NCBI RefSeq assembly: GCF_003704095.1
Contig: NW_020844672.1
Coordinates: forward strand, 682,010 to 746,000
DNA length: 63,991 bases
Origin: Pocillopora damicornis
Taxonomy: Eukaryota
Reading direction: 5' to 3'
The notes beneath the pieces were generated by a model. The model had not been told where the DNA came from and did not search any database. It worked only from the letters and a program-made list of their open reading frames with translations. Shown here one piece after another: positions 38,640-58,000 of the stretch (its first letter is position 1; every line of letters starts with the position of its first letter). A program made the translations under genes and the position numbers.

Positions 38640-41090
38640 TGCAAATGAGCTATAACTTTATCGGATGGAGAAATCAGTCGTTGAAACCTAACTTATAGCC
38701 AACTGTCAGACTTTCCATCTTCTAATTTACTGCTTCAATGATTCCTTCATTCATAATTCAAATTGACAGTTTGAAAGAGGCCTGTCATCTGGACAAAGAG
38801 CTTTTATCATTTAGGAGATAGGAAAAAATTCCAGACAAAGGCTTCTTGAGCGCAGTTCCACACACACGCACTCCAAGTTTTGTTTTTAACCATCTCATTA
38901 AGTTTTGCAAAATCATTTCTAAAACTCAAAAAACGCCTCTTATACATTTCAAATCTTCTTCCAACTAACCTTGTTACGACGTGTGGGAAAGAAGTTTACA
39001 AGAATTGATGAGTTCATCAAGTTCCTGTTTGTCTAATGACGTAAATCCGTAGAAAGTGTTTCCGAGAGTTCTTTTGTCATGGATATCCAAGAATTCTTTT
39101 GTTATATATATCAGAAAATTACAATTTTGTCATTAGCAGCAAAGTAGATGGCGTGTTCGAGAACGTTTTAACATAATGGTCTCGATCAGCCATCTATTAT
39201 ACTTTTACCCTGTTTGTTGCTTTTATCTAAATACATGCAGNNNNNNNNNNNNNNNNNNNNNNNNNNNNNNNNNNNNNNNNNNNNNNNNNNNNNNNNNNNN
39301 NNNNNNNNNNNNNNNNNNNNNNNNNNNNNNNNNNNNNNNNNNNNNNNNNNNNNNNNNNNNNNNNNNNNNNNNNNNNNNNNNNNNNNNNNNNNNNNNNNNN
39401 NNNNNNNNNNNNNNNNNNNNNNNNNNNNNNNNNNNNNNNNNNNNNNNNNNNNNNNNNNNNNNNNNNNNNNNNNNNNNNNNNNNNNNNNNNNNNNNNNNNN
39501 NNNNNNNNNNNNNNNNNNNNNNNNNNNNNNNNNNNNNNNNNNNNNNNNNNNNNNNNNNNNNNNNNNNNNNNNNNNNNNNNNNNNNNNNNNNNNNNNNNNN
39601 NNNNNNNNNNNNNNNNNNNNNNNNNNNNNNNNNNNNNNNNNNNNNNNNNNNNNNNNNNNNNNNNNNNNNNNNNNNNNNNNNNNNNNNNNNNNNNNNNNNN
39701 NNAACAAAAGTCAGTTAACGTTACAGTTTCCAGAATTAGAAAGAGATAGTAGAAAACTTAATCCTTAATGTGCACATTACTACTTAGTTGATTTCTGATA
39801 TGTAGAAATAAAGCACTGCAAGCGTGTTAAGGGCTTAGATGTTTTGCTTCCAATTGTTCTTGTTAAAACATCACATTCCACACAACACCTCAGCTGGAGA
39901 ACAAATTCTAGCCTCGAGCGAACCTATTTGGTCCATTTTTAGTAACACGATTGTCAATTGTGTGCTAACCCAACCGTTTAAACACTAGACCAAAATTAAT
40001 GAGATTGGCTTGAATAAGTGCTGTAAGATTTTCAAAGAGAACTATTGAAAGCCAATATGTTCTTCTGGATAATTTGTCTCAGGCCAAGTCCCAGAATGAT
40101 CCAAACAAATACACACATCTCTGATATTCAAACAGACAACAAAGAGCGTCTATTTCGGTAAACCATTTCAGTTCATTGAAAAAAATGACCCCTCAGTCAG
40201 AAAGTAAGTGAAACGTGGTAATTCCCTTATCCCTGTATACTCCGATAAGATAATCTACATGTAGACGTCTCCAAAATGTTTTACTTTGTGTAGATTCACG
40301 CAGAATATAGGATATGGCTTTCACACTCCGGCATATTGCCAACGGAGGCCAATCCTCAACAGGCCTGTTGATGTTGACAGTTTGAAAGAGGCCTTTCATC
40401 TGGAAAAAGCGCTTTTATCCTTTAACAGGCAGGAAATAATCCAGACCAAGGCTTCTAAAGCACAGTTCCACGCACACGCATTCCAGTTTTGCTTTTAACC
40501 ATCTCCTAAAGTTTTACTTAATCATTTCTAAAACTCAAAAACGCTTCTGAGAAAGAAGTTTGCGAGTCATCTGGACAAAGCGCTTTTATCCTTTATCAAG
40601 CAGGAAGCAATTAGGACGGCAACGCCAAGGAGAAAATGAAAGCATATTTTTCAGTTGGAANNNNNNNNNNNNNNNNNNNNNNNNNNNNNNNNNNNNNNNN
40701 NNNNNNNNNNNNNNNNNNNNNNNNNNNNNNNNNNNNNNNNNNNNNNNNNNNNNNNNNNNNAGTTGGAAGAAGATTTGAAATCGATAAGAGGCGTTTTTTG
40801 AGTTTTAGAAATGATTTAGCAAAACTTAACGAGATGGTTAAAAATAAAACTTGGAATGCGTGTGTGTGGAACTGCGCTTGAGAAGCCTTTGTCTGGAAAT
40901 TTTTCCTATCTCCTAAAGGATAAAAGCGCTTTGTCCAGATGACAGGCCTCTTTCATACTGTCAATTTGAATTATGAATGAAGGAATCATTGAAGCAGTAA
41001 ATTAGAAGATGGAAAGTCTGACAGTTGGCTATAAGTTAAGTTTCAACGACTGATTTACTCACCATCCGATAAAGTTATAGCCCATTTGAT
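38640..41090. repeat. Inverted repeat pair (38640-38966 and 40761-41090) made of the decarboxylase-array upstream module
   Basis: 40761-41090 is the reverse complement of 38640-38966 (e.g. ATCGGATGGAG...CTTATAGCCAACTGTCAGACTTTCCATC). Confidence 0.85.
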
Positions 41091-42017
41091 GCGGTCGTTT
41101 TGGCCGGTGCGAGTTTGAAATTGGTAATAGTGTAGCCCTCGAGACCAAAGTTTAGAGATCTGCTTGAAGAGATTCCTCTAACAATGGACTGTGTATAATG
41201 GAGGTATATGTGTTTATCTGTAGTTCTTTATTAGTCTAGTTACGATTTTTTTTCTCATGAAGCGTAAGAGTCAAGAATTACTCTTCAGCTTAGTGAAGAG
41301 ATTTCACGACGCTGCAGTTATATCACCTTTTTGTTAATGAAATACAATTTCCTTCGGCCATCTATAATTTAAAAATTTTTCGTCCGCGAAAGTTTGACAG
41401 TAAAATAATGGATGACAAATTAACATGTCTATTTATAGCCACGCAGTTACAAAGAAAATACATGAAGCTCTAGCTGACAACCGGACATGAAATGTAAGGC
41501 ATTAAGAATCAAGTGCAGAGTGTTCTCCTTTAATTTCATGCAAAACTATTAAAAAAAATTTTCAGTAAAGATCAGCTGGGAATACAAATTTGCTAGCTTT
41601 TCCCCGACTATTTAAAAGGTGCTTTGCTTTTAATTTGCCATGTTTAATGTTTCTCTAAATATAGAATTTTACGCTTTCATTTTTAACACAAGTCTTTTAG
41701 TTAATTTATGTTAAAAAGAAAGGAGCAACTTCATGTACCCGCCGCTTTGATGTTGGTTTTACATATTCAATGTGCCTCTCCCTAAAGGCATTGATTAAAC
41801 CATCTCAATTTTTTTACTTTCATTTTTTTAATCTAGGGTTTATTTTCATAGCAAAGTAGAACAAAAGAGTATGCTTGCAGAGATCTTTTTACTTTCAATT
41901 TTCAGTTTGTTCGAGAAGTAGAAACATGATGCACACTGTTTGACGTGAGGGAGAATAATTTCCGCGGCGCATTTATTTGCTTAAAATGCCACCCATGGCC
42001 ACCCTAACCAACTGAAC

Positions 42018-42146
42018 AGCCATCAATAACGCTAAATTATCTTTGGATTTACTTTTGACTTCTGTGATCAAGTTGTCTAACCATTTGTCAAGAACTTTCT
42101 GGTCAGAAGGAATCCATTGACCAACACGGTAAGGTTTGGAGCTCAT
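42018..42146 (-). pseudogene. 5' fragment of a PsiD-like decarboxylase (copy 1, truncated after ~43 codons)
   Basis: MSSKPYRVGQWIPSDQKVLDKWLDNLITEVKSKSKDNLALLMA followed by unrelated sequence. The full upstream module is retained. Confidence 0.88.
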
Positions 42147-43202
42147 GATTATGTTGCACGAAGTTTGCGACTCGTTTTGCTCGTAAATGATATACTCTTG
42201 TCGAATGTGTCTGCTTTTAACTGCAATATCGATGTCATTGCGCAAGCGCAACTGACGCTGGAATGCGTGTGCGTGCAACTGTGCTTAAGAAGCCTTTGTC
42301 TGGAATTTTTTCCTCCGTGATAAAGGATAAAAGCGCTTTGTTCAGATGACAAGCCTCTTTCATACTGTCAACGTCAGCAAGTAATTAAGTGTTGGACTCT
42401 GTTGGCAATATCCCAGAGTCTGAAAGCCATATCCTATGTTCCGCGTGAACTAAACAAAGTAAAACATTTTGACGACGTGCAGATTATCTAAACTGAGTAT
42501 ACAGGAATAAGGGAATTATCGCGTCTCACTTACTTTCTGAGGGATCATTTTTTGTTAAACTTTAGATTACAATGAACTGAAGTAGTTCACCTAAATAGAC
42601 CCTCTTTGTTGTCTGTATGAATATCAGAGATGTATGTCTTTGTTTGGATCATTGTGGGATTTGGCCGAGGTCAAAATATCCCGAGCAAGAACATTTTGGC
42701 TTTCAATAGTCCTCCAGTAGTCTGTGGATCATAACATGAATGTCAACCTAATTTAAAGATCACATTCAAAATATGTTGAGGGAACAAGATACAGTTAATT
42801 CCTAACCAAACGCAATATAAATGAGAGTTGTATCACATCTTAGAATGAGTATACTCATTCCAATTCTTGAAACTATAACGTTTATGACGCTTGTTTCACT
42901 CCTGTTTTACCACACTAGCTATGATTGAGAATCAGAGCGGTGAAATATCGAAATATTATTTTCAAACGTGCCTTCCAACAACATCAAATTCCAAACAACG
43001 CCTTCTCACGAAGAAAAAAAGGTTAGTTCTTTGCGCACGTGATAAGGTTATTTTCATTCCAAGCATCGTCAATCAATGTCAGTTTAGACAAGTATAAGAT
43101 AAAACCATCGTTGATAAAGGCAAATAATTTTTTCCACAAGTAGGCAAAATTCCGAAACGGTCACAATTACCTTCCAACAGTTATCCCACATTAACTTAGT
43201 GA

Positions 43203-43341
43203 TTTAGCATCATCAGTTGAGTTGATAACGTAAATTTGCCACCTTAAAGAGTTTAAACGCTTTTGAACTCTTTAGGATGGCTTATTTACGTTATCAACTC
43301 AGTTGATAATACTAAATTACCCTGTTATAATCTACCACTGA

Positions 43342-43378
<37 letters not shown>
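43203..43378. mobile_element. Palindromic retroelement-end relic (Penelope-like inverted pseudo-LTR type); second copy at ~61662-61810
   Basis: Long hairpin TTTAGCATCATCAGTTGAGTTGATAACGTAAAT...ATTTACGTTATCAACTCAGTTGATAATACTAAA followed by CACTGACGCAGCACCACAGTTTCTTTAGAAAC. The family assignment is from recall. Confidence 0.5.
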
Positions 43379-43576
43379 ATGCATTAACTCAGGTTAGGTT
43401 CGCTTTTCTACAAAAAATCGATCAATAAACGAGTTAACTCCATTGAATATCCAGACGTTTTGTATAGAATGCGACCATCTTATCAAATAACGTTTGTTTT
43501 AAATCAATTTTCAATCGAAAACGACAAAATTCAAATGTCGGTTATAAAGCCTTAAAACTAAGAGACAACAACGCTT

Positions 43577-43788
43577 TTAACCCTTTAACTCCCGTGAGTG
43601 ACCAGGGCAGAACTTCTCCTTACTATATCTATACAATATCATGCAGACAAGTAGTGAGAATAAAGAAGAATTTCAAATATGGGATTACTAATTAATCTAA
43701 TACCAAAGTCTCCAAACCAACATGATGAGAATCGTTTAGCAGGCAGTAAGGAGAATTACTAATGAGATCGTGGGATTTAAAGGGTTAA
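43577..43788. mobile_element. piggyBac-type MITE (~210 bp)
   Basis: TTAA|CCCTTTAACTCCC ... GGGATTTAAAGGG|TTAA, i.e. TTAA target duplication plus TIRs. Paralogs lie at ~44061-44270, 60190-60480, 60754-60964 and 61154-61420. Confidence 0.85.
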
Positions 43789-44060
43789 ACTCACATGAGA
43801 AAGAAGGGGCGGGAAAAGTTATACGCACGCAAAGCACATAATCATTTAACTTGTGACGCGTAAATGGTAGCTACACCTTCATCCTCCCCTCCCCTCCTGG
43901 ATTGTGATAGTATGTTTCTTTAAGTTCCCAGATAATTTTTAAAGCACATTCAAGTCATGCGTTACCTTCAGGTCGTGGATATTGCAACAAACTAATCTCC
44001 TGTGACTTTCACGGTTTAGGTCAATGTAATCTTGTAAAGCTGAATTTTCTTAATTTTGTT

Positions 44061-44270
44061 TGACCCTTTTCCTCCCATGAGTGACCAATAAAGAAATTTG
44101 TCCTCACAATATTTTGACAATATCAAGCCTAGAAGTCATTGGAATAACGAAAAATATCAGTAAGGGTATTATTAGTTGTTCTATTACTAAATTCTTCAAA
44201 TTGACGTCATAATAATTGTATGACAGGAAGTAAGGGGAAAATTAATGAGATCTTGGAGTTGAAGGGTTTT
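44061..44270. mobile_element. Second, more diverged copy of the same piggyBac-type MITE
   Basis: GACCCTTTTCCTCCCATGAGTGACC ... ATGAGATCTTGGAGTTGAAGGGTT, colinear with 43577-43788. Confidence 0.75.
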
Positions 44271-45846
44271 AGATTTTCAGTTTAAGAATTCTGCGGACAA
44301 GCTACAGCCAGCTAAGTACTCAATTGTAATACTATATTTTAGTGGTTCGTTTACCTGCGCAAAATTCCATGTATCTTTTGTCTGCCCATTTATTCAATTA
44401 TCTGTATGTTAATCCAGCCATTCACGCCTTCATCCTCCATCCATCCGTCCGTTCTGCCGTCCTTAAACCAGTCTATCCCTTCGCCTCTCCATCAGTCCAT
44501 CTGTCTTTATTTCGCGTGTCTGTCTGTCTGTCTTTCCGGTTGATCTTTCCTTCCCTTCAGTAACTTGAGATCTTCCGTCGGCTGGCTGACCGATTTGTTT
44601 TTCAGTGGTGACTAAGCGACTTCTTCAGTCTCCTCACAGGCGTAGAAAACCTTATCCTCATGTAAGCCTATAGTTTCCTAAATATGCCGGAGCAATATTG
44701 GTGCACTATTGTTAGTTACGTTCAGGTACGTTCAGGTTACTCAGGTTCTCATCTTGTCGAATGCGCAGGAAAGAAAAGGATAGGGCTAAGTAACGGCAAT
44801 ATCCAACTGGTAAGGAAGAGTTCAGGAATTTGAAAACTGGCGCCTCTTTTAGAAGTACAGCTCATCGTTACGCAAGCTCTTTTGAAGTACCAAAAACTCA
44901 GAACCTCTCAAAAATGTGTCAGATTTTCTCTGTATGAAGGACTGGAGTTTCTTCTTCTTCGAAGGCTGCATATTTTTATAGTCAGTCTTATTATGCTCGA
45001 TACAAATCAGGTTACTAAAACTGGTCGAATTGAATGCGGTTCTCTTTAAAGATACTAAGCCTATCATGATGACTTATTAATTTCATTCAGCAGAACTTGT
45101 GAGGCTTGACTTACCACAACGCAGTGTGTTGGTCATCTTGAAAATCTCTTAGAAAGCTAAAGCTGAAATTCCCGCCTTGAGTCCAAAGAGGGTTTCTCTG
45201 TAATATCGAAATATATATGTGTATATCAAAGAATACCTTAAAAATCCTACAGCACTTATTCAAGCCAATTTTGGTCTAGTGTTTATACGATTGGGTTAGC
45301 ACACAATTGACAATTGTGTTACTAAAAATGAACCAAACAGGTTCGCTCGAGACTAGAATTTGTTCTCCCGGTGAAGTGTTGTTTGCAATATGATGTTTTA
45401 ACAAGAACAGTTGAAAGCAAAATATCTAAGCCCTTTACACTCTTTCAGTGCTTTATTTCTACACATCAGAAACCAACTAAGTGGTAATGTGCACATCGAG
45501 GATTAAGTTTGCTATTATCGCAATTTCGGTAAACCCTGGGAAGATCTTTCACTCCAAATGTGAGTTAAGACACTTTTGGTTTGTAACTATTATTAAAAAT
45601 CCCATCGCAGATGCTAAAATAAGCGATTAAATGCTTTGGTTTGAAAATACACCATCAATTATCAGACATGCTCGTGGCACAAAAAGATTTGCTTGAAAAA
45701 CTTGCAAATATCGATGGCTAAAACCTTGAACAAAATCTCCCGTTGAAGGCTCTAAGCAAAGACAAGCGCAAACACGACCAGCGATGACAATTATCGTACA
45801 ACAGGCCTATTACAACGATCGAGGACAAACTACTCAAAAGGTAAAA

Positions 45847-46345
45847 CAACCTGTTGATTTGTCGTTGAGGAAAGCAGCAAATCCAGCAGTCGTAGCCATC
45901 AGCCAGTTCAGGATTACATTGATGGGGAGACCAACCCAGCCAGTTTTGTTGTACTCTGGAGTTTTTTCATGATGTGGTCTATTAAAATAATCATCAGTTG
46001 TCAGAAAGAGATACTTGCCCCTTTCGAAATACCTGGAAGTTTGTACTGTTGCCAGAACATCTGATGGAAAAACATGTTGATCTCGGGGTCGGAGATGATA
46101 GCTTTCAATAATTCTTGAATGGGTGGATGGAGAACGAGGTCTTCCTTTGTACCATAAGCAACTATCGGCGGAGTTTCATCACTAGCTGTTTCTTCATCTC
46201 CAGCTGGTGGATAAAGAGCCATTAATAACGCTAACGTATTTCTGTATTTAATTTGGACTTCTATGATCAAGTTGGTAAATCATTTGTCAAGAAATTTGTG
46301 ATCAGAAGGAATCCATTGACCAACACGGTAAGGTTTGGAGCTTAT
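45847..46345 (-). pseudogene. PsiD-like decarboxylase pseudogene (copy 2)
   Basis: Start codon ATG>ATA at 46345, TGG>TGA at 46280-46282 and indels near 46000. The gene is fused at ~45846 to the 3' flank of the intact copy, losing the catalytic two-thirds. Confidence 0.9.
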
Positions 46346-46591
46346 GATTATGTAGCATGTAGTTCGCGGCTTGTTTTGCTCCTAAATGATATAATCCTTT
46401 TGAATGGTCTGCTTTTAACTGTAATATCGATTTCATCGCGCAAGCGCAAATGACGCTGAAATGCGTGTGCCTGATAAAGGATAAAAGCGTTTTGTCTAGA
46501 TGACAGGAATTAGTTGTATCTTCCAGCTTGATAAAGGATAAAAGCGCTTTGTCCAGATGACTCGTAAACTTCTTTCTCACAAGCGTTTTCT

Positions 46592-46695
46592 GAGTTTTAG
46601 AAATGATTTAGCAATCCAAGCAAGTTTTAGAAATGATTTAGCAATCCAAGTAAGTTTTAGAAATGATTTAGCAATCCAAGCAAGTTTTAGAAATG
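46592..46695 (+). repeat. 30-bp tandem repeat (AAGTTTTAGAAATGATTTAGCAATCCAAGC) x ~3.5
   Basis: Directly visible with no unique spacers. Confidence 0.95.
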
Positions 46696-48671
46696 TTATG
46701 CTCACACGTTATAACAAGGTTAGTTGAAAGAAAATCTGAAATGGTAAAGAAGCGTTTTTTGAATTTTAGAAATGATTTAGCAAAACTTAAGGAGATGGTT
46801 AAAAGCAAAACTTGGAATGCGTGTGCGTGTGCGTGTAACTGCGCTTGAGAAGCCTTTGTCTGGAAATTATTCCTGCCTAATAAAGGATAAAAAAGCTTTA
46901 TCCAGAGAACAGGCCTCTTTCATACCGTGACCATCAACAGGTTGTTGAGGATTGGCCTCCCTCGGCAATGTGCGGGAGTGTGAAAGCCATATCCTATGTT
47001 CCGCTTGAACTAAACAAACTAAAACATTTTGGAGACGTCTACATGCAGATTATCTTATCGGAGTATACAGGAATAAGGGAATTACCGTGTTTCACTCACT
47101 CTCTGAGGGATCATTTTCACTTGAACTGTAGATTACGATAAACTGAAGCGGTTCACCGAAATAGACACTCTTTGTTGTCTGTCTAACTTTGATTGAGAAT
47201 CAGCGATGAAATATCGAAATGCTATTTTCAAACATTCCTGCTAACAACATCACATTCCAAACAATGCCTTCTCACGAAGAAAAAAAGCTTAGTTCTTAGT
47301 GCACCTGATAAGGTTATTTTCAATCCAAGCATCGTCAATGTCAGTTTAGACAAGTATAAGATATTNNNNNNNNNNNNNNNNNNNNNNNNNNNNNNNNNNN
47401 NNNNNNNNNNNNNNNNNNNNNNNNNNNNNNNNNNNNNNNNNNNNNNNNNNNNNNNNNNNNNNNNNGGCAACGCCAAGGAGAAAATGAAAGCATATTTTTC
47501 AGTTGGAATTTCGCGAATGACTGGATCTGTTTATAATCTCCTACGGCGCCACAAGTTAACCTCAGCATAATGTTAAGAGCAGCATTGAGTTCCAAATTGA
47601 AACTTAAATAATCTGCCGTCGGGGTTTCCTTTCTCGGACCACGCGAATTTTGATGATTTCACGTTATTTTGCAAAGGATGGCTAAGCTATTGTTCTGCNN
47701 NNNNNNNNTGTTGCTTTTCCACGTCCTCGTTGCTGTCGCAATCGTGGTTTGCTAAAGGTATTTATTGACGTGTTGTTTGAACTGTTGGATTTTCAGAAAA
47801 AAAAAGGCTTTGATATACTTGCGTAGGCGCATGNNNNNNNNNNNNNNNNNNNNNNNNNNNNNNNNNNNNNNNNNNNNNNNNNNNNNNNNNNNNNNNNNNN
47901 NNNNNNNNNNNNNNNNNNNNNNNNNNNNNNNNNNNNNNNNNNNNNNNNNNNNNNNNNNNNNNNNNNNNNNNNNNNTTTTATTCTTCGTGTGAAGGCGTTG
48001 TTTGGATTGTGATGTTGTCAGCAGGAAGGATTAAAAAGAATATTTCAATATTTCACCACAGTGATTCTCAATCTAACCTAATGTAGTAAAACTAAAGTCA
48101 GTTAAATAAACATCATTAACGTTACAGTTTCCAGAATTAAAAAGAGACACTCATCTTTGTTAGACAAACAGACAACAAAGAGTGTCTATTTCGGTGAACA
48201 ACTTCAGTTCATTGTAATCTAAAGTCACGNNNNNNNNNNNNNNNNNNNNNNNNNNNNNNNNNNNNNNNNNNNNNNNNNNNNNNNNNNNNNNNNNNNNNNN
48301 NNNNNNNNNNNNNNNNNNNNNNNNNNNNNNNNNNNNNNNNNNNNNNNNNNNNNNNNNNNNNNNNNNNNNNNNNNNNNNNNNNNNNNNNNNNNNNNNNNNN
48401 NNNNNNNNNNNNNNNNNNNNNNNNNNNNNNNNNNNACCTGTTGATGGTCACGGTATGAAAGATGCCTGTCATCTGAACAAAGCGCTTTTATCCTTTATTA
48501 GGCAGGAACAATTTCCAGACAAAGGATTCTCAAGCAGAGTTGCACGCACACGCATTCCAGTGTCAGTTGCGCTTGCGCAATCAAATCGATATTGCAGTTA
48601 AAAGCAGACACATTCAACAGGTGTATACCATTTACGAGCAAAACGAGCCGCGANNNNNNNNNNACATAATC

Positions 48672-49563
48672 ATGAGCTCCAAACCTTATCGTGTAGGTCA
48701 ATGGATTCCTTCTGACCAGAAAGTTATTGACAAATGGTTAGCCAACCTGATCACAGAAGTCAAAAGCAAATCCAAAGATAAGTTAGCGTTATTGATGGCT
48801 CTTCATCCACCGGCTGAAGATNNNNNNNNNNNNNNNNNNNNNNNNNNNNTAACAGTTGCTGACGGTACAGAGGAAGACCTCGGTCTCCATCCGCCTGTTC
48901 AAAAATTATTAAAAGCTATCACCTCCGACCCCGAGATAAACATGTTCTTCCATCAGATGTTCTGGCAACAGTACAAGAATCCAGATAGTTCGAAAGGGAC
49001 AAGGATCCCTTGCTGGCAACTGATGATNNNNNNNNNNNACTACATCATGACAACAGCTCCAGAGTACAACGAAACTGGTTTGGTTGGCTTCCCCATCAAT
49101 GCAATCCTGAACTGGCCGATGGCTACGACTGCTGGATTTGCTGCTTTCCTCAANNNNNNNNNNAACAGGTTGTTCAAAAAAATTCTTAAGCATTGGGGAA
49201 AGTTTCTTTCCANNNNNNNNNNTTGTTACGTGTTGAATGAAGAGCCTCGTCATGGGTGGTTTGGTGAACACGCAATGCAAGCAATGCCAAANNNNNNNNN
49301 NGAGTTCAAATGCAAGCCTTATGAAAAACATCACGGTTTTACTTCATGGGATGATTTCTTCACCAGAGAGTTTCGTGATGGCATTCGNNNNNNNNNNTCT
49401 CCGGACGACGATTCCATTGTTGCGAATGCTTGTGAATCGGCGCCATACCAAATCTCTGCCGCCGTGAAAAACAGGGACATCTTCTGGATAAAGCACCAAC
49501 GGTACTCAGTGGACTTTATCCTGAACATGAGTGACCTTGCCAAGCGATTTCATGGTGGAACCG
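48672..49563 (+). CDS. PsiD-like pyruvoyl-dependent decarboxylase (copy 3; partial, 3' end in an assembly gap)
   Basis: Open frame from MSSKPYRVGQWIPSD through LVGFPINAILNWPMATTAG, GFTSWDDFFTREFRDG and NACESAPY to RFHGGT, then N-gap 49564-49663. Several short internal N runs preserve the frame. Confidence 0.82.
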
Positions 49564-50908
49564 NNNNNNNNNNNNNNNNNNNNNNNNNNNNNNNNNNNNN
49601 NNNNNNNNNNNNNNNNNNNNNNNNNNNNNNNNNNNNNNNNNNNNNNNNNNNNNNNNNNNNNNNATAAATCTGTTCGACGCGACACGAGATTATCATATCA
49701 ATACTGATCGGCTATCTATTGAAGGCCATTATGGCTCCTAAAGATATTAAGCTCTTGACCTTTTTTGTTACTTTCATCTAAATACGTGCAGGTCTCGATG
49801 CCGATTGAGCTGTAGGTTTGATTCCTGACTTGGGCTCAGAAATATTCTGACTAATTAATAGCTCGGAGGATACCTCCAAATTTCCATCAGTTAGTCCAGT
49901 CTACGCAATATTGTCGTGTTGTTTTAACTGTTGGGTTTGCAGAAACAAAAAGGCTTTGATATACTAATGTCTAAACTGACATTGCTTGACGATGATTGGA
50001 CTGAAGATAATCTTATCAGGTGCGCTAAGAACTAAGCTTTTTCTTCTTGTGAAGGCGTTGTTTGGAATGTGATGTTGTTGGAAGGAACGTTTGCAAAGGA
50101 TATCTCGATTTTTCACCGCTTTGATTCTCCATCAACCCTAATGTGGTAAAGCAAGAGTTAAACAAGCGTCAAAAACGTTACAATTTCAAGAATTGGAATA
50201 AGTCTACTCATTCTAATATTTGATAGAACTCTCATTTACATTGCATTTGGATAGGAATTAATCGTATCTTATCGTCTCAATACATTTTGAATGTGATCTT
50301 TAAATCAGGTTGACATTTATGTTATGGTCCATGGACTACCGAGGAATATTGAAAGCCAAATGTTCTTCCTCAGGATAATTTGTCTTAGGCCAAATCCCAC
50401 AATGATCCAAACAAAGACACACATCTCTGATATTCAAACAGACAACAAAGACCGTCCATTTCGGTGAATCACTTCAACCCATTGTAATCAAAAGTCACGA
50501 AAAAATAACCCTCAGAAAGTAAGCGTAACGCGGTAATTTCCTTATTCCTGTATACTCCGATAAGATAATCTGCACGTAGACGTCTCCAAAATGTTTTCCT
50601 TTGTTTAGTTCACGCAGAACCTAGGATGAGGCTTTCACACTGGGATATTGCCAACAGAGGCCGACCCTCAATAACCTGTTAATCGTCACGGTATGAAAGA
50701 GGCCTGTCATCTGAACAAGGCGCTTTCATCCTTTATCAGGCGGGAAAAATTTCCAGACAAAGGCCTCTCAAGCACAGTTGCACGCACACGCATTCCAGTG
50801 TCAGTGCGCTTGCGCGATGAAATCTATATTGCAGTTAAAAGCAGACACATTCAACAGGAGTATATCATTTACGAGCAAAACGAGCCGCACACTTCGTGCA
50901 ACATAATC

Positions 50909-51656
50909 ATGAGCTCCAAACCTTACCGTATTGGTCAATGGATTCCTTCTGACCAGAAAGTTCTTGACAAATGGTTAGACAACTTGATCACAGAAGTCAA
51001 AAGTAAATCCAAAGATAGGTTAGCGTTATTGATGGCTCTTCATCCGCCGGCTGAAGATGAAGAGACGGCTAAAGGTGGAAATCAGCTAGCAGTTGCTCAC
51101 GGTACAGAGGAAGATCTCAGTCTCCATCCACCGGTTCAAGAATTATTGAAAGCTATCATCTCCGACCCCGAGATAAACATGTTTTTCCATCAGATGTTCT
51201 GGCAACAGTACAAGAATCCAGATAGTTCGATAGGAACAAGGATCCCTTGCTGGCAACTGATGATTATTTTAATCGACTTCATCATGACCACAGCTCCAGT
51301 GTACAACAAAACTGGTTTGGTTGGCTTCCCCATCAACGTAATCCTAAACTGGCCGATGGCTACGACTGCTTTCCTCAACGACAAAGTCAACAGGTTGTTC
51401 AAAAGTATTCTCAACTATTGGGGAAAGTTTCTTTCCAGTTCTGCTTCTTGTTACGTGTTGACTGATGATCCTCGTCATGGTTGGTTTGGTGAAGACGCAA
51501 TGCAAGCCATGCCAAACTTCGTCCAAGAGTTCAAATGCAAGCCCAACGAAAAACATTATGGTTTTACATCATGGGATGATTTCTTCACCAGAGAGTTTCG
51601 TAATGGCATTCGTCCAGTAGCATCTCCGGACGACGATTCCATTGTTGCGAATGCTT
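50909..51656 (+). CDS. PsiD-like pyruvoyl-dependent decarboxylase (copy 4; partial, runs into a gap, 4-aa in-frame deletion)
   Basis: Open frame MSSKPYRIGQWIPSD...GFTSWDDFFTREFRNGIRPVASPDDDSIVANA, then N-gap 51657-51756. MATTAFLND lacks the 12 nt present in the other copies. Confidence 0.8.
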
Positions 51657-52271
51657 NNNNNNNNNNNNNNNNNNNNNNNNNNNNNNNNNNNNNNNNNNNN
51701 NNNNNNNNNNNNNNNNNNNNNNNNNNNNNNNNNNNNNNNNNNNNNNNNNNNNNNNNCCATTTATTCAATCATCTGTACGTTAATCACGGCTTCATTCCTC
51801 AATCCATCCGTCCGTTCTGCCGTCCTTAAGCGAGTCTATCCCTTCGTCTCTCCATCAGTCTATCTGTCTTTATTTCGCGTGTCTGTCTGCCTGTCTGTCT
51901 TTCTGATTGGTCTTTTCTTCCCTTCAGTAGCTTGAGATCTTCCGTCGGCAGGCTGACCGATTTGTTTTTGGTGGTGACTAAGCGACTACTTCATTCGCCG
52001 TACAGGCGTAGAAAAACCTCATCCTCATGTAAGCCTATAGTTTCCTTCGAAATGTCGGAGCAAATATCGGTGCACCATTGTCAATTACGTTCGGGTTCGT
52101 TCAGCTTAGTTTTGTCATCTCGTCGAATGCGCGGGAAAGACAAGGAATGGGCTAAGCAACGAAATACCCGCCGGATAAGAAGGAGTTCAGGAATTTGAAA
52201 ACTGGTACCTCTTTTAGGAGTACAGCTGATTGTAATGGAAGCTCCTTTGAATACACTCTTGCAGTACTTTT

Positions 52272-52960
52272 GTTCGCTAGGTGAGGTGTTGTGTTGTGTG
52301 GAATGTGATATTTTTAACGAGAGAAGTTGAAAGAAAAACATCCAAGCCCTTAAGAGTCTTGCAGTGCTTTATTTCTACATATCAGAAATCAACTAAGTAG
52401 CAATGTGCACATCGAAGATTGATGCATCGAGAATGAATGCCTTAAAAATCCTAATTACTTTTGGCCTAGAATTCAAACTGTTGGATTAGAGCACAATTGA
52501 CAATTGTGTTATTAACAATGGACCAAACAGTTTCGGTCGAGGCTAGAAGTTTTTCTCTAGGTGAGGTGCTGTGTTGTGTGGAATGTGATATTTTTAACAG
52601 GAAAAGTTGAAAGGAAAACATCTAAGCCCTTCAGCAGCGCTTTATTTCTGCATATCAGAAATCAACTAAGTAGTCATGTACACATCGAAGATTTATGCAT
52701 CGAGAATGAATGCCTTTAAAATTCTAATTACTTTTGGCTCAGTATTCAAACGGTTGAATTAGCACACAATTGACAATTGTGTGATTAAAAATGGACCAAA
52801 CAGTTTCGGTCGAGGCTAGAATTTTTTCTCTAGGTGAGGTGTTGTGTTGTGTGGAATGTGATATTTTTAACAAGAAAAGTTGAAAGAAAACATCTAAGCC
52901 CTGCAGCAGTGCTTTATATCTACCTATCAGAAATCAACTAAGTAGTAACGTGCACATTGA
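52272..52960 (+). repeat. ~275-bp tandem repeat, ~2.5 copies
   Basis: CTAGGTGAGGTG(T/C)TGTGTTGTGTGGAATGTGATATTTTTAAC recurs at ~52277, 52557 and 52829. The paralogous block at ~45240-45500 has a single copy. Confidence 0.9.
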
Positions 52961-53582
52961 GGATTAAGTTTTCTATTATTGCACTTTCGGTAAACCATGG
53001 GAATATATTTCAATCCAAATGTGAGTTAAGAAACTTTTGGTTAGTAATTATTATTAAAAATCCCATGGCAAATGCTAGAATAAGTGATTAAATGCTCCGG
53101 TTTGAAAATACACCATCAATTATTAGACATGCTCCTGGCACAAATAGATATGCTTGGAAAACTTGCAAACTTCGATGGGGTCGAGGGCTCTAAGCAAGGA
53201 CAAGCGCAAACACGGCCAGCGATGACAATTATCGTACAACAAGCCTATTACAACGGTCGAGGACCAACTACTCAAAAGGTAAAAATAAATGTGTGGTCTT
53301 GCAGCACATAACAAACCAAGGCTCACATAAGACTCTCATAAGGATTGCAAAATAATTTAACAGGCCTAAACAATTCACAAACACTAGGCCAGAACATTCC
53401 TAACTTTAGTAGTTGCCGATCATTCTAAATTTAGTAGTTCATACGATTGACGAGGTGAAAATGAAAAAAACTAAATTTCCCTATCATCAAAAGACATCTA
53501 AGAGGAAAGAAAGAAAATTATCATGTTCATGCCGAACTCTGTCAAAATCAAGCTGTTTATCAAAATCCATATTTATATTTGC

Positions 53583-54938
53583 TTAGGTTGATGGATGTAC
53601 GGTCGCAATTTTCGATTTAACATGAATATTTTCGGTATGCAGACCTGGCGTTTGACCTCTCGTATCGAACTCAATATTAACTCCAGGGCGAAATATCAGT
53701 AGATGGGTGGACCCACCATAGTGAAACATGCCAAGCTGGTCACCTTTCTTCACTTTATCCTTTTCTTCAATCGTGATTTCGTTGGAGGACACCTCTGACA
53801 TACCGAGCGATACGAAGCACATCAAGCCAATGTGGGGATTATCAGCTTGAATGTAGATAATACCTCTGGCAGCTACTTGGGCTAGGTATCCTTGTGACAT
53901 GCATATGTTGGCCGATGCGGGGCTATCCTGAATGTCGTGGGTTGCAGAATAATAAGAACCATCCACGAGTTCTGTCTTGTAAATGGTGCCCGACACAGGA
54001 CTGTGCCATCGGTGATAACTGGTGGCACTTAGGTACGCTTGGTAGACGGTTCCACCATGAAATTGCTTGGCAAGGTTACTCATGTTCAGGATGAAGTCCA
54101 ATGAGTACCGTTGGTGCTTTGCCCAGAAGAAGTCCCTCTTTTTCACGGCTGTAGAGATCTGGTATGGTGCTGACTCACAGGCATTCGCAACAATGGAATC
54201 GTCTTCCGGAGATGCTACTGGACGAATGCCATCACGAAACTCTCTGGTGAAGAAGTCATCCCATGATGTAAAACCATAATGTTTTTCATTAGGCTTGCAT
54301 TTGAACTCTTGGACGAAGTTTGGCATTGTTTGCATTGCGTCTTCACCAAACCAACCATGACGAGGATCATCAGTCAACACGTGACAAGAAGCAGAACTGG
54401 AAAGAAACTTTCCCCAGTAGTTGAGAATACTTTTGAACAACCTGTTGACTTTGTCGTTGAGGAAAGCAGAAAATCCAGCAGTCGTAGCCATCGGCCAGTT
54501 CAGGATTACATTGATGGGGAGACCAACCAAACTGGTTTTGTTGTACTCTGGAGCTGTTGTCATGATGTAGTCGATTAAAATAATCATCAGTTGCCAACAA
54601 GGGATCCTTGTTCTTTTCGAACCGTCTGGATTCTTGTACTGTTGCCAGAACATCTGATGGAAGAACATATTGATCTCGGGATCGGAGATGATAGCTTTCA
54701 ATAATTCTTGAACAGGTGGATGGAGACCGAGGTCTTCTTCTGTACCGTGAGCAACTATCGGCGGAGTTTCACCATCAGCTGTTTCTTCATCTTCAGCCGG
54801 TGGATGAAGAGCCATCAATAACGCTAACTTATCTTTGTATTTAATTTGGACCTCTGTGATGAAGTTGGCTAACCATTTGTCAGGAAATTTGAGGTCAGAA
54901 GGAATCCATTGACCAACACGGTAAGGTCTGAAGCTCAT
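53583..54938 (-). CDS. psiD-like: Complete intronless PsiD-like / phosphatidylserine-decarboxylase-family pyruvoyl-dependent decarboxylase proenzyme, 451 aa (copy 5; L-tryptophan decarboxylase-like)
   Basis: ATG at 54938 in ATAATCATG context, shared by the paralogs. PSDC-type N-domain: GQWIPSD, LVGLPINVILNWPMATTAG, GWF. Catalytic domain: GFTSWDDFFTREFRDGIRPV, NACESAPY, GGTVYQAYLSATSYHRWHSPVSG, SQGYL, ADNPHIGL, GMSEVSS, VKKGDQLGMFHYGGSTH. The autocleavage Ser is predicted at residue 410. Confidence 0.93.
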   Translation of the reverse strand: MSFRPYRVGQWIPSDLKFPDKWLANFITEVQIKYKDKLALLMALHPPAEDEETADGETPPIVAHGTEEDLGLHPPVQELLKAIISDPEINMFFHQMFWQQYKNPDGSKRTRIPCWQLMIILIDYIMTTAPEYNKTSLVGLPINVILNWPMATTAGFSAFLNDKVNRLFKSILNYWGKFLSSSASCHVLTDDPRHGWFGEDAMQTMPNFVQEFKCKPNEKHYGFTSWDDFFTREFRDGIRPVASPEDDSIVANACESAPYQISTAVKKRDFFWAKHQRYSLDFILNMSNLAKQFHGGTVYQAYLSATSYHRWHSPVSGTIYKTELVDGSYYSATHDIQDSPASANICMSQGYLAQVAARGIIYIQADNPHIGLMCFVSLGMSEVSSNEITIEEKDKVKKGDQLGMFHYGGSTHLLIFRPGVNIEFDTRGQTPGLHTENIHVKSKIATVHPST

Positions 54939-55099
54939 GATTATGTTGCATGTAGTTCGCGGCTTGTTTTGCTCGTAAATGATATACTCCTGTAGAGTGT
55001 GTCTGCTTTTAACTGCAATACAGATTTCATTGCGCAAACGCAAATGACGCTAAAATACGTGTGCGTGCAACTGTTGCTTGAGAAACGTTTGTCTGGAAA

Positions 55100-58000
55100 T
55101 TTTTCCTGCCTGATAAAGAAGAAAAGTGTTCTGTCTAGATGAGAGGAACTAATTGTATCTTCCTGCCTGATAAAGGATAAAAGCGCTTTGTCCGGATGAC
55201 AGGCCTCTTTCATACCGTGACCATCAACAGGTTGTTAGAGAAACACGAACTAATTAATTCGTAGCAAAACGCAATTTAAATGAGATTTCTATCAAAATCT
55301 TAGAATGAGTAAACTTATTCCAATTCTTTAAACTGTAACGTTAATGACGCTTGTTTAACTGACTCCTGTTTTACCACATTAACTTTGATTGAGAATCAGA
55401 TCGGTGAAATATGGAAATATTATTTTCAAACATTCCTGCTAACAGAATCACAGCCTAAACAACGCCTTCACACGAAGGAAAAAAAGCTTAGTTCTTAATA
55501 CACCTGATGAGGTTATTTTCATTCCTTGCATCTTCAATCAATGCCAGTTTAGACAAGTGTAAGATATTACATGCGTGTATGTTAGTATATCAAGGCCCTT
55601 TTGCTTCTGCAGACCCAATAGTTCAAACAACACGTCAATTTTGCGTAGACTGGACGAACTGATCGAAATTCGGAGGTATCCTCCGAGCAGTTAATTAGTC
55701 AAAATATTTCTTAGCGAAGTCAGGAATCAAACTTACCTTACAATCGGCATGGAGACCTGCATGTATTTAGATGAAAGTAACAAAAAGAGTAGAAGAATAC
55801 TCGATGGCGGTTCGAGACCATTATGTAAAAAATGTTCTCAAACACGCTATCTATTATACTACTAACCACAAAATGGTAATTATTTGATGATGTAAATATA
55901 ATAAAACAATACTTGCATATCCATGACAAAAGAACTCTCGGAAACAATTTCCACGGATTTACGTTATCAGAGAAACACGGACTTGATGACTGATCAGTTC
56001 TCGTAAACTTCTCTCTCACATTACACTAAAATGAGTGTGCCTGATAAAGGATAAAAGCTTTTTGTCTAGACGACAGGAATTAATTGTATCTTCCTGCTTG
56101 ATAAAGGATAAAAGTGCTTTGTCCAGATGACTCATAAACTTCTTTCTCACAAGTGTTTTTTGAGTTTTAGAAATGATTTAGCAAAACTTAAGGAGACGAT
56201 TAAAAACAAAATTTGGAATGCGTGTGCGTGGAACTGCGCTTGAGAAGCCTTTTTCTGGAAATTGGTCTTGTCTCATACAGGATAAAAGCGCTTTGTCCAG
56301 ATGACAGGCCTCTTTGAAACTATCAACGTTAACGGGTTGTTAAGGATTGGCAACCGTTGGCAATATGCCGGAGTGTGAAAGGCATTATCCTATGTCCCGC
56401 GTGAACTAAACAAAGTCATACATTTTGGAGACGTTTACATGCAGATTTTCTTATCGAAGTATACAGGAATAATGGAATAACTGTGTTTTACTTACTTTCC
56501 GACTGAGGGGTCATTTTATCTTGAGCTTTAGATTACAATGAACTGAAATGATTCCCCGTAATAGACGCTCTTTGTTGTCTGTTTAAATATCATTGTGGGA
56601 TTTGGCTTAAGACAAATTATCCCGCGGAAGAACATTTTGGCTTTTAATAGTCCTCCAGTAGTTCGTGGATCATAACATAAATATCAACCTGATTTAAAGA
56701 TCACATTCAAAAGATGTTGATAGAGTAAGATACAATTAATTCGTAGCCAAACGCAATTTAAATGAGAGTTCTATCAAATCTTAGAACGAGTAAACTTATT
56801 CCAATTCTTGAAACTCTAACGTTTATTGCGCTTGTTTAACTGACTCCTGTTTTACCACATTGACTTTGATTGAGAATCAGAGCGGTGAAATATCGAAATA
56901 TTGTATTCAACATTCCTGCTAACAACATCACAGTCCAAACAACGCTTTCACACGAAGAAAAAAAGCTTAATTCTTAGTGCACCTGATAAGGTTATTTCCA
57001 TTCCAAGCGTCGTCAATCAATGTCAGTTAGAAAAGTATAAGATATTACATGCACGTACGTTAGTATCTCAGAGCCTTTTTGTTTCTGCAAACCCAACAGT
57101 TCAAATATCACGTATACACTGCGTAGACATTGACATGCAGCGCTTTTTCTTGATAGGATTGCTTACGTAATGGTCCAAGGTAGTGTTTTTCTCTATTGAT
57201 AATCTCAGCACTTGAAAGGTAATTGGAGCAAAACGTGAGTCATTATTGAGTAAGTGGCACCACTCGTACAACTGCATGCTGTATGAATGCCAGCACAATC
57301 GCGTTCGTGCCAGAGGAAGATCCCGAAGGCACGCACATTGATCATTCTTACTCATACTTTTTCTGTACGTGAGCCAAAACGTCTGCTGGTACCCAAGGTT
57401 GAAAAAGCCAGGTCAAGTCAGTCTTGACTACGAGTTTGTTATTTCACTTTATTATTTTTTGTAACTTGATAGTCCATTATGTAAAGTTTTTTTAGTCTTT
57501 TGCTACCGAGGGAATATAAAATAATTAGCATACTATCGCATTTCATTTCGTGAGATGGTTGATTATACACATTATACGCATGGGACCAGGGAGAGTAAGA
57601 TTTCAGGGGGAGGTGTAGGTTTCGTTCGATTCTCGTATTTCGTGTACGTGACATGNNNNNNNNNNNNNNNNNNNNNNNNNNNNNNNNNNNNNNNNNNNNN
57701 NNNNNNNNNNNNNNNNNNNNNNNNNNNNNNNNNNNNNNNNNNNNNNNNNNNNNNNTGCAGTTTAAATGAGAGTATTATCAAATATTAGAATGAGTAGACT
57801 TATTCCAATTCTTGAAACTGTAACGTTTATGACGCTTGTTTAACTGACTCCTGTTTTACCATATTAGCTTTAATTGAGAATCAGAGTGGTGAAATATCGA
57901 GATATTCTTTTCAAACATTCCTGCTAACAGCATCACATTCCAAACAATGCCTTCATATGAACAAAAAAAAACTTAGCTCTTAATGCACCTGATAAGTTTA

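What the first reader, a model, noticed from the sequence alone, without database searches (positions are those of the whole stretch)
42018..54938. Expanded array of PsiD-like (tryptophan-decarboxylase-type) pyruvoyl enzymes in an animal genome: candidate amine/alkaloid biosynthesis locus
Seen: at least five intronless paralogs (42146-, 46345-, 48672+, 50909+, 54938-), one of them complete. Established: the PSDC N-domain + PS-decarboxylase architecture with GMFHxGGS defines a clade known from fungi and bacteria. It includes PsiD, the PLP-independent L-tryptophan decarboxylase of psilocybin synthesis, and is distinct from animal mitochondrial PISD (LGST motif, intron-containing, with a targeting peptide). 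Inference: this animal has a soluble amino-acid decarboxylase family, amplified locally, that could make tryptamine-type or other amines for defence, signalling or symbiosis. The substrate cannot be read from the sequence.
Basis: partly seen in the sequence, partly recalled or inferred. Interest (0 to 1): 0.92.

Follow-up and report, generated by a model that had tools for sequence, protein, structure and literature searches.

The report
Coral pyruvoyl amino-acid decarboxylase gene array
A stony-coral genome carries a small tandem family (one intact gene, two cut by assembly gaps, two dead relics) of a bacterial-type, cofactor-self-making amino-acid decarboxylase related to the psilocybin enzyme PsiD and to a fungal arginine decarboxylase. 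The family is real and probably active, is already annotated across corals, and shows no sign of being tryptophan-specific or part of an alkaloid gene cluster.

Summary
Five PSDC + PS_Dcarbxylase copies lie at the stated places. E (54938-53586, minus strand) is intact at 451 aa. C and D are open but end at 100-N gaps. A and B are relics. A sixth, intact copy (F) sits on a 3.4 kb contig. Copies are 78-91% identical in DNA, so they are paralogs, and dN/dS is 0.17-0.43. Short N runs inside C keep register and frame.

The family assignment is right. PsiD scores E 1e-61 and E. coli PSD only 4e-10. The Glu-His-Ser triad and the GGS cleavage site are kept. The genome has a separate multi-exon PISD with LGST.

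The tryptophan/alkaloid reading is not supported. PsiD's indole-pocket residues are confined to the PsiD subclade. The coral proteins carry the majority pocket shared with bacteria and with Aspergillus Ao-ADC1 (PDB 9JER), an arginine decarboxylase. On the tree the coral clade sits away from PsiD. No biosynthetic neighbours occur here, in two related coral loci or in about 74 bacterial loci.

The family is already annotated in Acropora, Porites, Montipora, Oculina, Dendronephthya, a sponge and a crinoid. It is a new member of a known kind, and the substrate is unknown.

The parts
53583..54938 (-). Copy E: intact single-exon CDS (451 aa plus stop) of a PSDC + PS_Dcarbxylase pyruvoyl proenzyme
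   Evidence: ORF. Pfam. PsiD E 1.5e-61, Ao-ADC1 3.3e-55, E. coli PSD 4e-10. AlphaFold pLDDT 87; Foldseek TM 0.83 to PsiD and 0.75 to Ao-ADC1. dN/dS 0.19-0.43.
53709..53717 (-). Codons for Gly408-Gly409-Ser410. Predicted self-cleavage between G409 and S410, with S410 becoming the pyruvoyl group. This gives a 409-aa beta chain and a 42-aa alpha chain.
   Evidence: G408, G409 and S410 are invariant in 56 family members. They align with PsiD G402/S403 and Ao-ADC1 G441/S442 (PMC11929908, PMC12904898). Coordinates.
54939..55240 (-). 5' leader and proximal upstream block of E. It is duplicated with every copy (A-E, 81-91% identity).
   Evidence: blastn self-comparison. RNA-library contigs run from the CDS to 55058 and 55128 without a joint.
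53018..53582 (-). Probable 3' UTR of E
   Evidence: Contigs from a polyA RNA-seq run (X4) lie on 53018-53670 with 0-1 differences. Contigs only, so this is suggestive.
50909..51655 (+). Copy D: open frame for aa 1-253, then the 100-N gap. Has a 4-aa in-frame deletion in the conserved AGFxAF segment.
   Evidence: dN/dS to E is 0.30.
51657..51756 (.). Assembly gap that ends copy D. D and E converge on it.
   Evidence: No homology follows the gap.
48672..49562 (+). Copy C: open frame for aa 1-297 with six in-register N runs, then the 100-N gap. The first pocket loop has the family consensus (GFPINAILNWPM).
   Evidence: dN/dS to E is 0.33.
49564..49663 (.). Assembly gap that ends copy C
   Evidence: The sequence after the gap is the upstream block of D.
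45843..46345 (-). Copy B: pseudogene. Start codon ATG changed to ATA, a frameshift, and a deletion of about 1.15 kb removing the catalytic two thirds.
42012..42146 (-). Copy A: relic of the first 45 codons plus the upstream block (to 42349)

Best explanation
The locus is a lineage-specific birth-and-death array of an anthozoan-wide, single-exon gene. The gene encodes a soluble, PLP-independent, pyruvoyl-dependent amino-acid decarboxylase of the PSDC + PS_Dcarbxylase family. The characterised members of that family are PsiD (tryptophan) and Ao-ADC1 (arginine).

Mechanism, inferred by homology: the 451-aa proenzyme of copy E cuts itself between Gly409 and Ser410, using the Glu255-His309-Ser410 triad. 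Ser410 becomes a pyruvoyl group, which forms a Schiff base with the alpha-amino group of a free amino acid and releases CO2 to give an amine. An N-terminal helix carrying the conserved RVGxW(L/I)P motif probably lids the pocket, as Trp27 does in PsiD.

The substrate is not read out. The pocket is the polar 'majority' type shared with bacterial homologs and Ao-ADC1 (Asn143, Ser348-Gln349, Ala305), not PsiD's hydrophobic indole pocket. I therefore favour a polar or basic amino acid, with arginine to agmatine as the most concrete candidate, over tryptophan.

The gene entered animals long ago from, or shares ancestry with, bacterial genes that are about 50-55% identical. In this coral it duplicated recently (paralog dS about 0.2). 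That left two intact genes (E here, F on another contig), two of unknown completeness (C, D) and several relics.
For: Shown:
- Domain architecture.
- Full-length similarity to PsiD and Ao-ADC1, far above lipid PSD.
- Invariant E255, H309, G408, G409, S410, L303 and F405.
- N-terminal W motif shared with bacteria, sponge, Ao-ADC1 and the PsiD clade.
- Pocket columns match bacteria and Ao-ADC1, not PsiD.
- The anthozoan clade has 99-100% SH-aLRT support and lies apart from the PsiD and Ao-ADC1 representatives.
- At least 569 bacterial species genomes carry relatives. The 80 kept are 49-59% identical, most matching residues 5-447.
- Purifying selection: dN/dS 0.17-0.22 to an ortholog and 0.27-0.43 among paralogs.
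- Paralogs are 78-91% identical in DNA.
- Contigs from three RNA-seq libraries (X4, X5, X7) lie on the CDS and UTRs, and none of the four runs laid reaches 55184-55456.
- Animal genes lie on the same 762 kb contig.
- The same gene sits in eukaryotic context in other coral assemblies.

Inferred: self-cleavage, soluble location, lid function and substrate class.
Against: - No biochemical data exist for any animal member.
- The pocket argument rests on alignment to two solved relatives, and the residues that bind arginine's guanidinium in Ao-ADC1 were not available to me.
- Some Ao-ADC1-specific acidic positions are not acidic in corals: the Asp in SADSYH is Thr306, and the Asp in VDWPM is Asn147.
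- Both intact copies deviate at conserved positions. E has F140L, F302Y and a 2-aa insertion before SQGY. F has S304R and W311F. They may be diversifying or decaying.
- The RNA evidence is contigs only, at 95-100% identity, from mixed-species samples. Strand and level are not shown.
- C and D cannot be judged. A related gapless assembly has no C or D between E and B.
Confidence: 0.6

Rival explanations
1. The enzymes are PsiD-type L-tryptophan (or halo- or hydroxy-tryptophan) decarboxylases, and the array is a tryptamine or indole-alkaloid biosynthesis locus.
For: PsiD is the best PDB sequence and fold hit. NCBI names the coral homologs 'L-tryptophan decarboxylase-like'. Tryptophan-derived aplysinopsins occur in sponges, stony corals and an anemone (PMC2707041). 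One Xanthomonas homolog lies 33 bp downstream of a gene with FAD_binding_3 and Trp_halogenase hits.
Against: PsiD beats Ao-ADC1 only marginally (211 vs 191 bits). PsiD's indole-contact residues P114, Y117, V292 and T374 are restricted to the PsiD subclade and replaced in corals. The coral clade is not near PsiD on the tree. No methyltransferase, kinase, P450 or halogenase lies beside the array or in related coral loci. From my own knowledge of the structure, aplysinopsins appear to keep the tryptophan carboxyl carbon, so decarboxylation would not be needed; this is untested here. The Xanthomonas neighbour is not conserved among 74 bacterial loci.
Confidence: 0.12
2. A specific version nested within the best explanation. 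The coral (and sponge) genes are pyruvoyl-dependent arginine decarboxylases like Ao-ADC1 and give these animals their own route to agmatine and polyamines.
For: Ao-ADC1 (9JER, 9JF5) belongs to the same family, has no PSD activity and needs no PLP (PMC12904898). It shares the pocket pattern I/V-F-N, F-L-S-A, M-S-E-V and SQxY with corals. Fold TM is 0.75.
Against: Corals are no closer to the Ao-ADC1 representative than to PsiD on the tree. The shared pattern is the family majority state, so it may be ancestral rather than arginine-specific. Residues particular to the Ao-ADC1 cluster (SAD, HCWN) are not kept. No agmatinase or agmatine deiminase is linked in bacteria.
Confidence: 0.2
3. They are lipid phosphatidylserine decarboxylases, a second PE-synthesis route. 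This is how the sponge homologs were read in 2016.
For: The Pfam and NCBIfam names are PSD. The sponge paper treats its candidates as PSD.
Against: All NCBIfam PSD equivalog scores are far below cut-off (101 vs 371 bits). The E. coli PSD match is partial (E 4e-10, TM 0.38 of the query). Of the two characterised PSDC-type members, Ao-ADC1 was tested and showed no PSD activity (PMC12904898), and PsiD is reported as a tryptophan-specific decarboxylase (PMC11929908). The genome keeps a canonical PISD with LGST.
Confidence: 0.05
4. The array in this species is decaying. The copies, E and F included, are on the way to pseudogenes and have no current function.
For: Two clear relics lie in the window and two C-terminal fragments on contig C4203. 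D has a 4-aa deletion in a conserved motif. E and F carry substitutions at conserved sites, and paralog dN/dS rises to 0.43.
Against: E and F have full open frames with every catalytic residue. dN/dS stays well below 1. A 96.5% identical intact gene exists in a related assembly. RNA-library contigs cover E.
Confidence: 0.1
5. Bacterial or fungal contamination, or an assembly artefact that inflates the copy number.
For: The C-D block is bounded by 100-N gaps and is absent between E and B in a related gapless contig. The assembly is a fragmented draft.
Against: E, B and A lie in gap-free sequence on a 762 kb contig with GPCR and RAG1-like genes. The nearest bacterial proteins are only about 55% identical. 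The copies differ by 9-22%. The same gene is found in several independent coral assemblies with retrotransposon, BTB and SAP neighbours.
Confidence: 0.02

Closest known systems
PsiD, L-tryptophan decarboxylase of psilocybin synthesis (Psilocybe cubensis; PDB 8X4Q, 8ZIA; PMC11929908)
   Same: Same two-domain architecture and the same fold (TM 0.83). Same Glu-His-Ser triad, Gly|Ser self-cleavage to pyruvoyl, and N-terminal Trp-bearing helix motif. About 36% identity.
   Different: Indole-pocket residues differ: P114 to L/F, Y117 to N, V292 to A, T374 to S, L342 to Q. PsiD's loop with Y338/L339 is not alignable. It sits in a different subclade. The coral genes have an acidic linker of about 35 aa after the N-terminal helix and no psi-type neighbours.
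Ao-ADC1, pyruvoyl-dependent arginine decarboxylase of Aspergillus oryzae (PDB 9JER, 9JF5, 9JFN; Murakami 2024 and Odagaki 2024 as reviewed in PMC12904898)
   Same: Same family and fold (E 3.3e-55, TM 0.75, 34% identity). Shares the majority pocket pattern and the SQxY and GFP(I/F)N motifs with corals.
   Different: Separate subclade. Cluster-specific residues (SADSYHCWN, VDWPMGTESGRQ) are not kept in corals. Ao-ADC1 has longer loops. Its activity is acid-dependent in a fungus.
Automatically annotated animal homologs: 'L-tryptophan decarboxylase-like' (Acropora millepora, Dendronephthya gigantea, Anneissia japonica), 'Decarboxylase iboD' (Acropora cervicornis), and uncharacterised proteins of Montipora, Porites, Oculina and the sponge Dysidea avara
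   Same: Orthologs and paralogs of the window's genes, 54-78% identical (98% for an unnamed near-conspecific protein). Same length and domains. One strongly supported anthozoan clade.
   Different: None has been studied. This genome has a local expansion with relics, and E carries a 2-aa loop insertion seen only in its closest relatives.
PSD-like horizontal-transfer candidates in the sponge Amphimedon queenslandica (PMC4784904)
   Same: A bacterial-type PS_Dcarbxylase-family gene in an early-branching animal. A sponge clade (Dysidea) groups with, or near, the anthozoan clade.
   Different: I did not obtain the Amphimedon sequences, so identity with the Dysidea clade is not shown. The paper read them as lipid PSD.
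Canonical PSD / animal PISD (E. coli PSD 6L06, 7CNW; this genome's PISD on contig C1725)
   Same: Shares the C-terminal PS_Dcarbxylase fold and pyruvoyl chemistry.
   Different: No PSDC domain. LGST rather than GGS. Multi-exon in this genome. Only 19% identity and a partial match.

Membership tests
PSDC + PS_Dcarbxylase soluble pyruvoyl decarboxylases (PsiD / Ao-ADC1 type) | N-terminal PSDC (PF12588) followed by PS_Dcarbxylase (PF02666) | tested here: met
   PSDC 5.6e-40 covering positions 1-138 of 138. PS_Dcarbxylase 2.8e-35.
PSDC + PS_Dcarbxylase soluble pyruvoyl decarboxylases (PsiD / Ao-ADC1 type) | Gly-Gly-Ser self-cleavage motif and Glu-His-Ser triad | tested here: met
   E255, H309, G408, G409 and S410 align with PsiD E242, H296, G402, S403 and are invariant in 56 sequences.
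PSDC + PS_Dcarbxylase soluble pyruvoyl decarboxylases (PsiD / Ao-ADC1 type) | Fold like the solved members | tested here: met
   Model pLDDT 87.3. Foldseek gives PsiD at 7e-28 (TM 0.83) and Ao-ADC1 at 2e-23 (TM 0.75).
PSDC + PS_Dcarbxylase soluble pyruvoyl decarboxylases (PsiD / Ao-ADC1 type) | Actual autocatalytic cleavage and pyruvoyl formation | not testable with these tools
   Needs SDS-PAGE or mass spectrometry of recombinant protein against an S410A control.
PsiD (L-tryptophan-specific decarboxylase) | Indole pocket L112, P114, Y117, F289, V292, Y338, L339, M373, T374, I376 (PMC11929908) | tested here: not met
   E reads V, L, N, Y, A, (loop not alignable), M, S, V. The coral clade reads V, F, N, F, A, M, S, V. 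The P/Y/V-T/T pattern is found only in the PsiD subclade.
PsiD (L-tryptophan-specific decarboxylase) | Groups with PsiD on a family tree | tested here: not met
   The PsiD representative P0256 lies in a different supported subclade.
PsiD (L-tryptophan-specific decarboxylase) | Sits in a psi-type cluster (methyltransferase, kinase, P450) | tested here: not met
   No such genes in the window, its flank, or the related coral loci L013 to L015.
Ao-ADC1-type arginine decarboxylase | Pocket like Ao-ADC1 | tested here: inconclusive
   The majority pattern is shared, but cluster-specific Asp, Cys and Asn are not. The guanidinium ligands are not known to me.
Ao-ADC1-type arginine decarboxylase | Groups with Ao-ADC1 on a family tree | tested here: not met
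   The Ao-ADC1 representative P0283 falls in another group.
Canonical phosphatidylserine decarboxylase (PISD / Psd1) | LGST motif, no PSDC domain, equivalog-level score | tested here: not met
   The motif is GGST after FHY. All NCBIfam PSD models score far below cut-off. The true PISD is elsewhere, on C1725.
Physically clustered biosynthetic pathway | Conserved neighbouring pathway genes | tested here: not met
   None in coral loci. No Pfam family recurs in more than 4 of 74 upstream or 3 of 73 downstream bacterial neighbours.

The most novel reading that the evidence does not exclude
Sponges and anthozoans share one anciently acquired (or ancestral) PLP-independent pyruvoyl amino-acid decarboxylase. 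It gives these early-branching animals a host-encoded route to agmatine or another signalling or defence amine. The recent expansion in this coral, with changes in pocket-lining positions (E: F140L, F302Y and a 2-aa loop insertion; F: S304R, W311F), would then be substrate diversification rather than decay.
Probability: 0.15. Interest if true: 0.75.

Novelty: new member of a known kind. Interest (0 to 1): 0.45.

Why it matters
Animal-encoded small-molecule biosynthesis in corals and sponges is an active field, and animals are generally thought to lack a true arginine decarboxylase. This is a conserved, selected, probably expressed family of PLP-independent amino-acid decarboxylases, spread across Anthozoa and present in sponges. 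I found no published assay of any animal member.

The practical point of this report is that the database label 'L-tryptophan decarboxylase-like' should not be trusted. The pocket is the bacterial / Ao-ADC1 type. A simple substrate screen on one or two recombinant proteins would settle what amine corals make with it.

The locus itself is an ordinary tandem expansion with relics and gives no evidence of a pathway cluster.

Tried and rejected
1. Biosynthetic cluster. ORFs across 10-41 kb and 55-64 kb, plus 10 kb beyond the window, gave only rhodopsin-type GPCRs, a coiled-coil gene and RAG1-like/RING fragments. A sub-threshold P450 hit (E 0.009, 15 bits, 36679-37014) I treat as noise.

2. Functional clue from bacterial neighbourhoods. 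The nearest upstream and downstream ORFs of about 74 bacterial loci share no family: TPR is the most frequent at 4 of 74 and Peptidase_M14 at 3 of 73. Three single loci were also uninformative, apart from one Xanthomonas FAD/halogenase-type neighbour.

3. A single-protein scan of genome contigs found nothing. The alignment query worked.

4. Literature. No paper in the held library links PsiD or tryptophan decarboxylase with corals or cnidarian gene transfer. A Pocillopora spatial-expression paper does not mention decarboxylases. The Ao-ADC1 structure paper is not held.

5. Cluster look-ups gave few organism names. Protein Atlas hits only repeat 'PSD family, mostly bacteria'.

6. Donor assignment. 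The branches joining the coral clade to bacteria, fungi or sponges are weak and changed between the two trees. I name no donor.

The related assembly L013 was used only to compare copy order.

Full report
**What is there**

The window is G000:C1307:682010-746000, on a 762 kb contig of a 234.35 Mb assembly in 4393 contigs. RNA and DNA runs that hold the stretch are labelled coral. The nearest named proteins are scleractinian. From memory, untested, the assembly size and contig count fit the published Pocillopora damicornis draft.

- A: 42146-42012 (-), aa 1-45.
- B: 46345-45843 (-), aa 1-168.
- C: 48672-49562 (+), aa 1-297.
- D: 50909-51655 (+), aa 1-253.
- E: 54938-53586 (-), 451 aa, complete.

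A genome-wide search adds an intact sixth copy, F, on the 3.4 kb contig C3784. F is 84% identical to E in protein. Two C-terminal fragments lie on C4203. Pairwise DNA identity among copies is 78-91%, so these are paralogs and not alleles or duplicated contigs.

**Gaps**

Block-by-block alignment of C to E keeps one constant offset across all six N runs inside the C reading frame. Those runs therefore stand for exactly the bases they replace, and the frame is preserved. The 10-N run at 48654-48663 lies in the leader.

The 100-N gaps at 49564-49663 and 51657-51756 truncate C and D, and what follows them is unrelated. Their completeness is unknown, and I filled nothing.

In a related gapless contig (L013, 95-99% identical) the order is E-like, B, A, with no C or D between them. 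The C-D block is bounded by 100-N gaps. It is either a real copy-number difference or a scaffolding placement.

**Dead and live copies**

- B has lost its start codon (ATG to ATA at 46345-46343). It also has a frameshift and a deletion of about 1.15 kb.
- A is a 45-codon stub.
- D has a 4-aa in-frame deletion in a conserved motif.
- E and F are fully open.

dN/dS is 0.17-0.22 against an ortholog from another coral (L014, dS about 0.6-0.75). Among paralogs it is 0.27-0.43 (dS about 0.2). This indicates purifying selection that relaxed somewhat after a recent, lineage-specific expansion.

**Family**

E has PSDC (5.6e-40) plus PS_Dcarbxylase (2.8e-35). All NCBIfam lipid-PSD equivalogs score far below cut-off.

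Against solved structures, PsiD scores 1.5e-61, Aspergillus oryzae Ao-ADC1 (9JER) 3.3e-55 and E. coli PSD 4e-10. An AlphaFold model (pLDDT 87) matches PsiD at TM 0.83, Ao-ADC1 at 0.75 and E. coli PSD at 0.68, each relative to target length.

The PsiD triad Glu242-His296-Ser403 and Gly402 (PMC11929908) correspond to E255, H309, S410 and G409. These are invariant across 56 family members. The predicted products are a 409-aa beta chain and a 42-aa alpha chain bearing the pyruvoyl group.

The N-terminal motif RVGxW(L/I)P is shared by corals, a sponge, bacteria, Ao-ADC1 and the PsiD clade. In PsiD this Trp (W27) plugs the pocket (PMC11929908).

The genome's canonical PISD is a separate multi-exon gene on C1725 with LGST.

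**Why not tryptophan-type**

PsiD's indole contacts are L112, P114, Y117, F289, V292, Y338, L339, M373, T374 and I376.

In a 133-sequence alignment, the P-Y-V/T-T pattern occurs only in the PsiD subclade. The coral clade reads V-F-N-F-A-M-S-V, as do the bacterial and fungal neighbours and most of the family. Ao-ADC1 has the same pattern (I-F-N, FLSA, MSEV, SQRY). Ao-ADC1 is a PLP-independent arginine decarboxylase with no PSD activity (PMC12904898).

The majority pocket has polar residues (Asn143, Gln349) where PsiD has Tyr and Leu. The label 'tryptophan decarboxylase-like' is therefore a nearest-name artefact.

This does not prove arginine. Residues particular to the Ao-ADC1 cluster are not kept in corals, and I could not obtain the guanidinium contacts.

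**Phylogeny and distribution**

The anthozoan sequences (Scleractinia plus the octocoral Dendronephthya) form one clade with 99-100% SH-aLRT support. The PsiD representative (P0256) and the Ao-ADC1 representative (P0283) lie in other subclades.

The nearest non-animal relatives are 50-55% identical stand-alone bacterial genes from many phyla, in at least 569 species genomes. Two Geoglossomycete fungal genes are nested among these bacteria.

A demosponge clade (Dysidea avara) sat next to the anthozoans in one tree and apart from them in the other. Holding sponges and anthozoans together gives a likelihood 10.4 units higher than the free quick search, with p-AU 0.675. One animal clade is therefore not rejected, but it is not shown either. 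Sponge PSD-like transfer candidates were reported in 2016 (PMC4784904).

**Context**

The window also holds three rhodopsin-family GPCR ORFs (2.4-9.5 kb) and a coiled-coil gene. The flank holds RAG1-like/RING fragments. No methyltransferase, halogenase, kinase or P450 is present.

Related coral loci have BTB, SAP and retrotransposon neighbours. Bacterial neighbours show no recurring family. The 'biosynthesis locus' idea therefore has no support beyond the decarboxylase itself.

**Expression**

Logan contigs from three RNA-seq libraries lie on E. One is polyA-selected (X4); the other two are X5 and X7. Contigs from a fourth run (X1), whose RNA label is only a guess, lie on it too. They cover from about 53018 (3' UTR) through the CDS to 55128 (5' leader), at 95-100% identity and without joints. 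No run gave depth at 55184-55456. This suggests an unspliced mRNA of about 2.1 kb. Contigs cannot give strand, level or the exact paralog.

**Verdict**

The family assignment, the distinction from PISD and the integration in an animal genome are supported. The tryptophan/alkaloid reading is not.

The genes are best described as coral members of a known, widely annotated but functionally unstudied animal branch of the PsiD / Ao-ADC1 pyruvoyl decarboxylase family. Here the branch has expanded and partly decayed. The substrate is unknown. I favour a polar or basic amino acid, with arginine as the most concrete candidate, over tryptophan.

Noticed in passing
L019:10001-11353 (Anneissia japonica scaffold VUNX01037216.1): The crinoid 'L-tryptophan decarboxylase-like' gene is nested inside the scleractinian clade (75% aa identity to E, 83% nt to a coral ortholog). 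It lies as a single exon in 21 kb of gap-free, AT-rich sequence whose flanks match no coral locus I held. Either it is a cnidarian-to-echinoderm transfer, or a coral-derived scaffold sits in that assembly.
   Followed up: partly
P0434 and the P0146 clade: A demosponge clade of the same family (Dysidea avara) exists. Forcing sponges and anthozoans into one clade gives a better likelihood than the free quick tree (p-AU 0.675). A single ancient animal acquisition is possible.
   Followed up: partly
window 2414-2992 (-), 4161-4967 (+), 8506-9480 (+): Three single-exon rhodopsin-family GPCR ORFs lie 33-40 kb from the array. Their best solved relatives are adenosine A3, trace-amine (TAAR9), 5-HT1E and histamine H2 receptors (E about 1e-15 to 1e-13). 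Amine-type receptors near a putative amine-forming enzyme are probably coincidence, given how many such GPCRs cnidarians have.
   Followed up: partly
L012:3127-3781 (G000:C1307:749127-749781): Adjacent ORFs with a RAG1 importin-binding domain (8.7e-10) and a weak RING finger hit: a RAG1-like / Transib-type fragment just beyond the window.
   Followed up: no
L013 (ENA ERZ25067899 contig, 2.49 Mb) vs window 40761-55240: In a closely related gapless assembly the B-A part is 98.9% identical to the window, but the E-like gene is only 95.3% identical, and C and D are missing between E and B. This points to copy-number variation, gene conversion or a scaffolding difference.
   Followed up: partly
G000:C3784 (L001) copy F; window copy E: Both intact copies deviate from the anthozoan consensus at conserved positions. 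F has S304R and W311F in the FLSAxSYHRWH strand. E has F140L, F302Y and a 2-aa 'IC' insertion before SQGY, shared only with its closest relative P0003.
   Followed up: partly
L018:65-1135: In Xanthomonas nasturtii the homolog lies 33 bp downstream of, and on the same strand as, a 356-aa gene with FAD_binding_3 and Trp_halogenase hits. This pairing did not recur in the 74 other bacterial loci.
   Followed up: partly
window 53281-53327: A 47-nt segment in the 3' region of E has very high word depth in RNA libraries and occurs at the end of an otherwise unrelated 2660-nt contig. It is probably a short dispersed repeat.
   Followed up: no
P0387 (Bacteroidales homolog), N-terminus: One bacterial homolog starts with a lipoprotein-type signal peptide (hydrophobic stretch then Cys). 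Some bacterial members may therefore act outside the cytoplasm. The coral proteins have no such leader.
   Followed up: no
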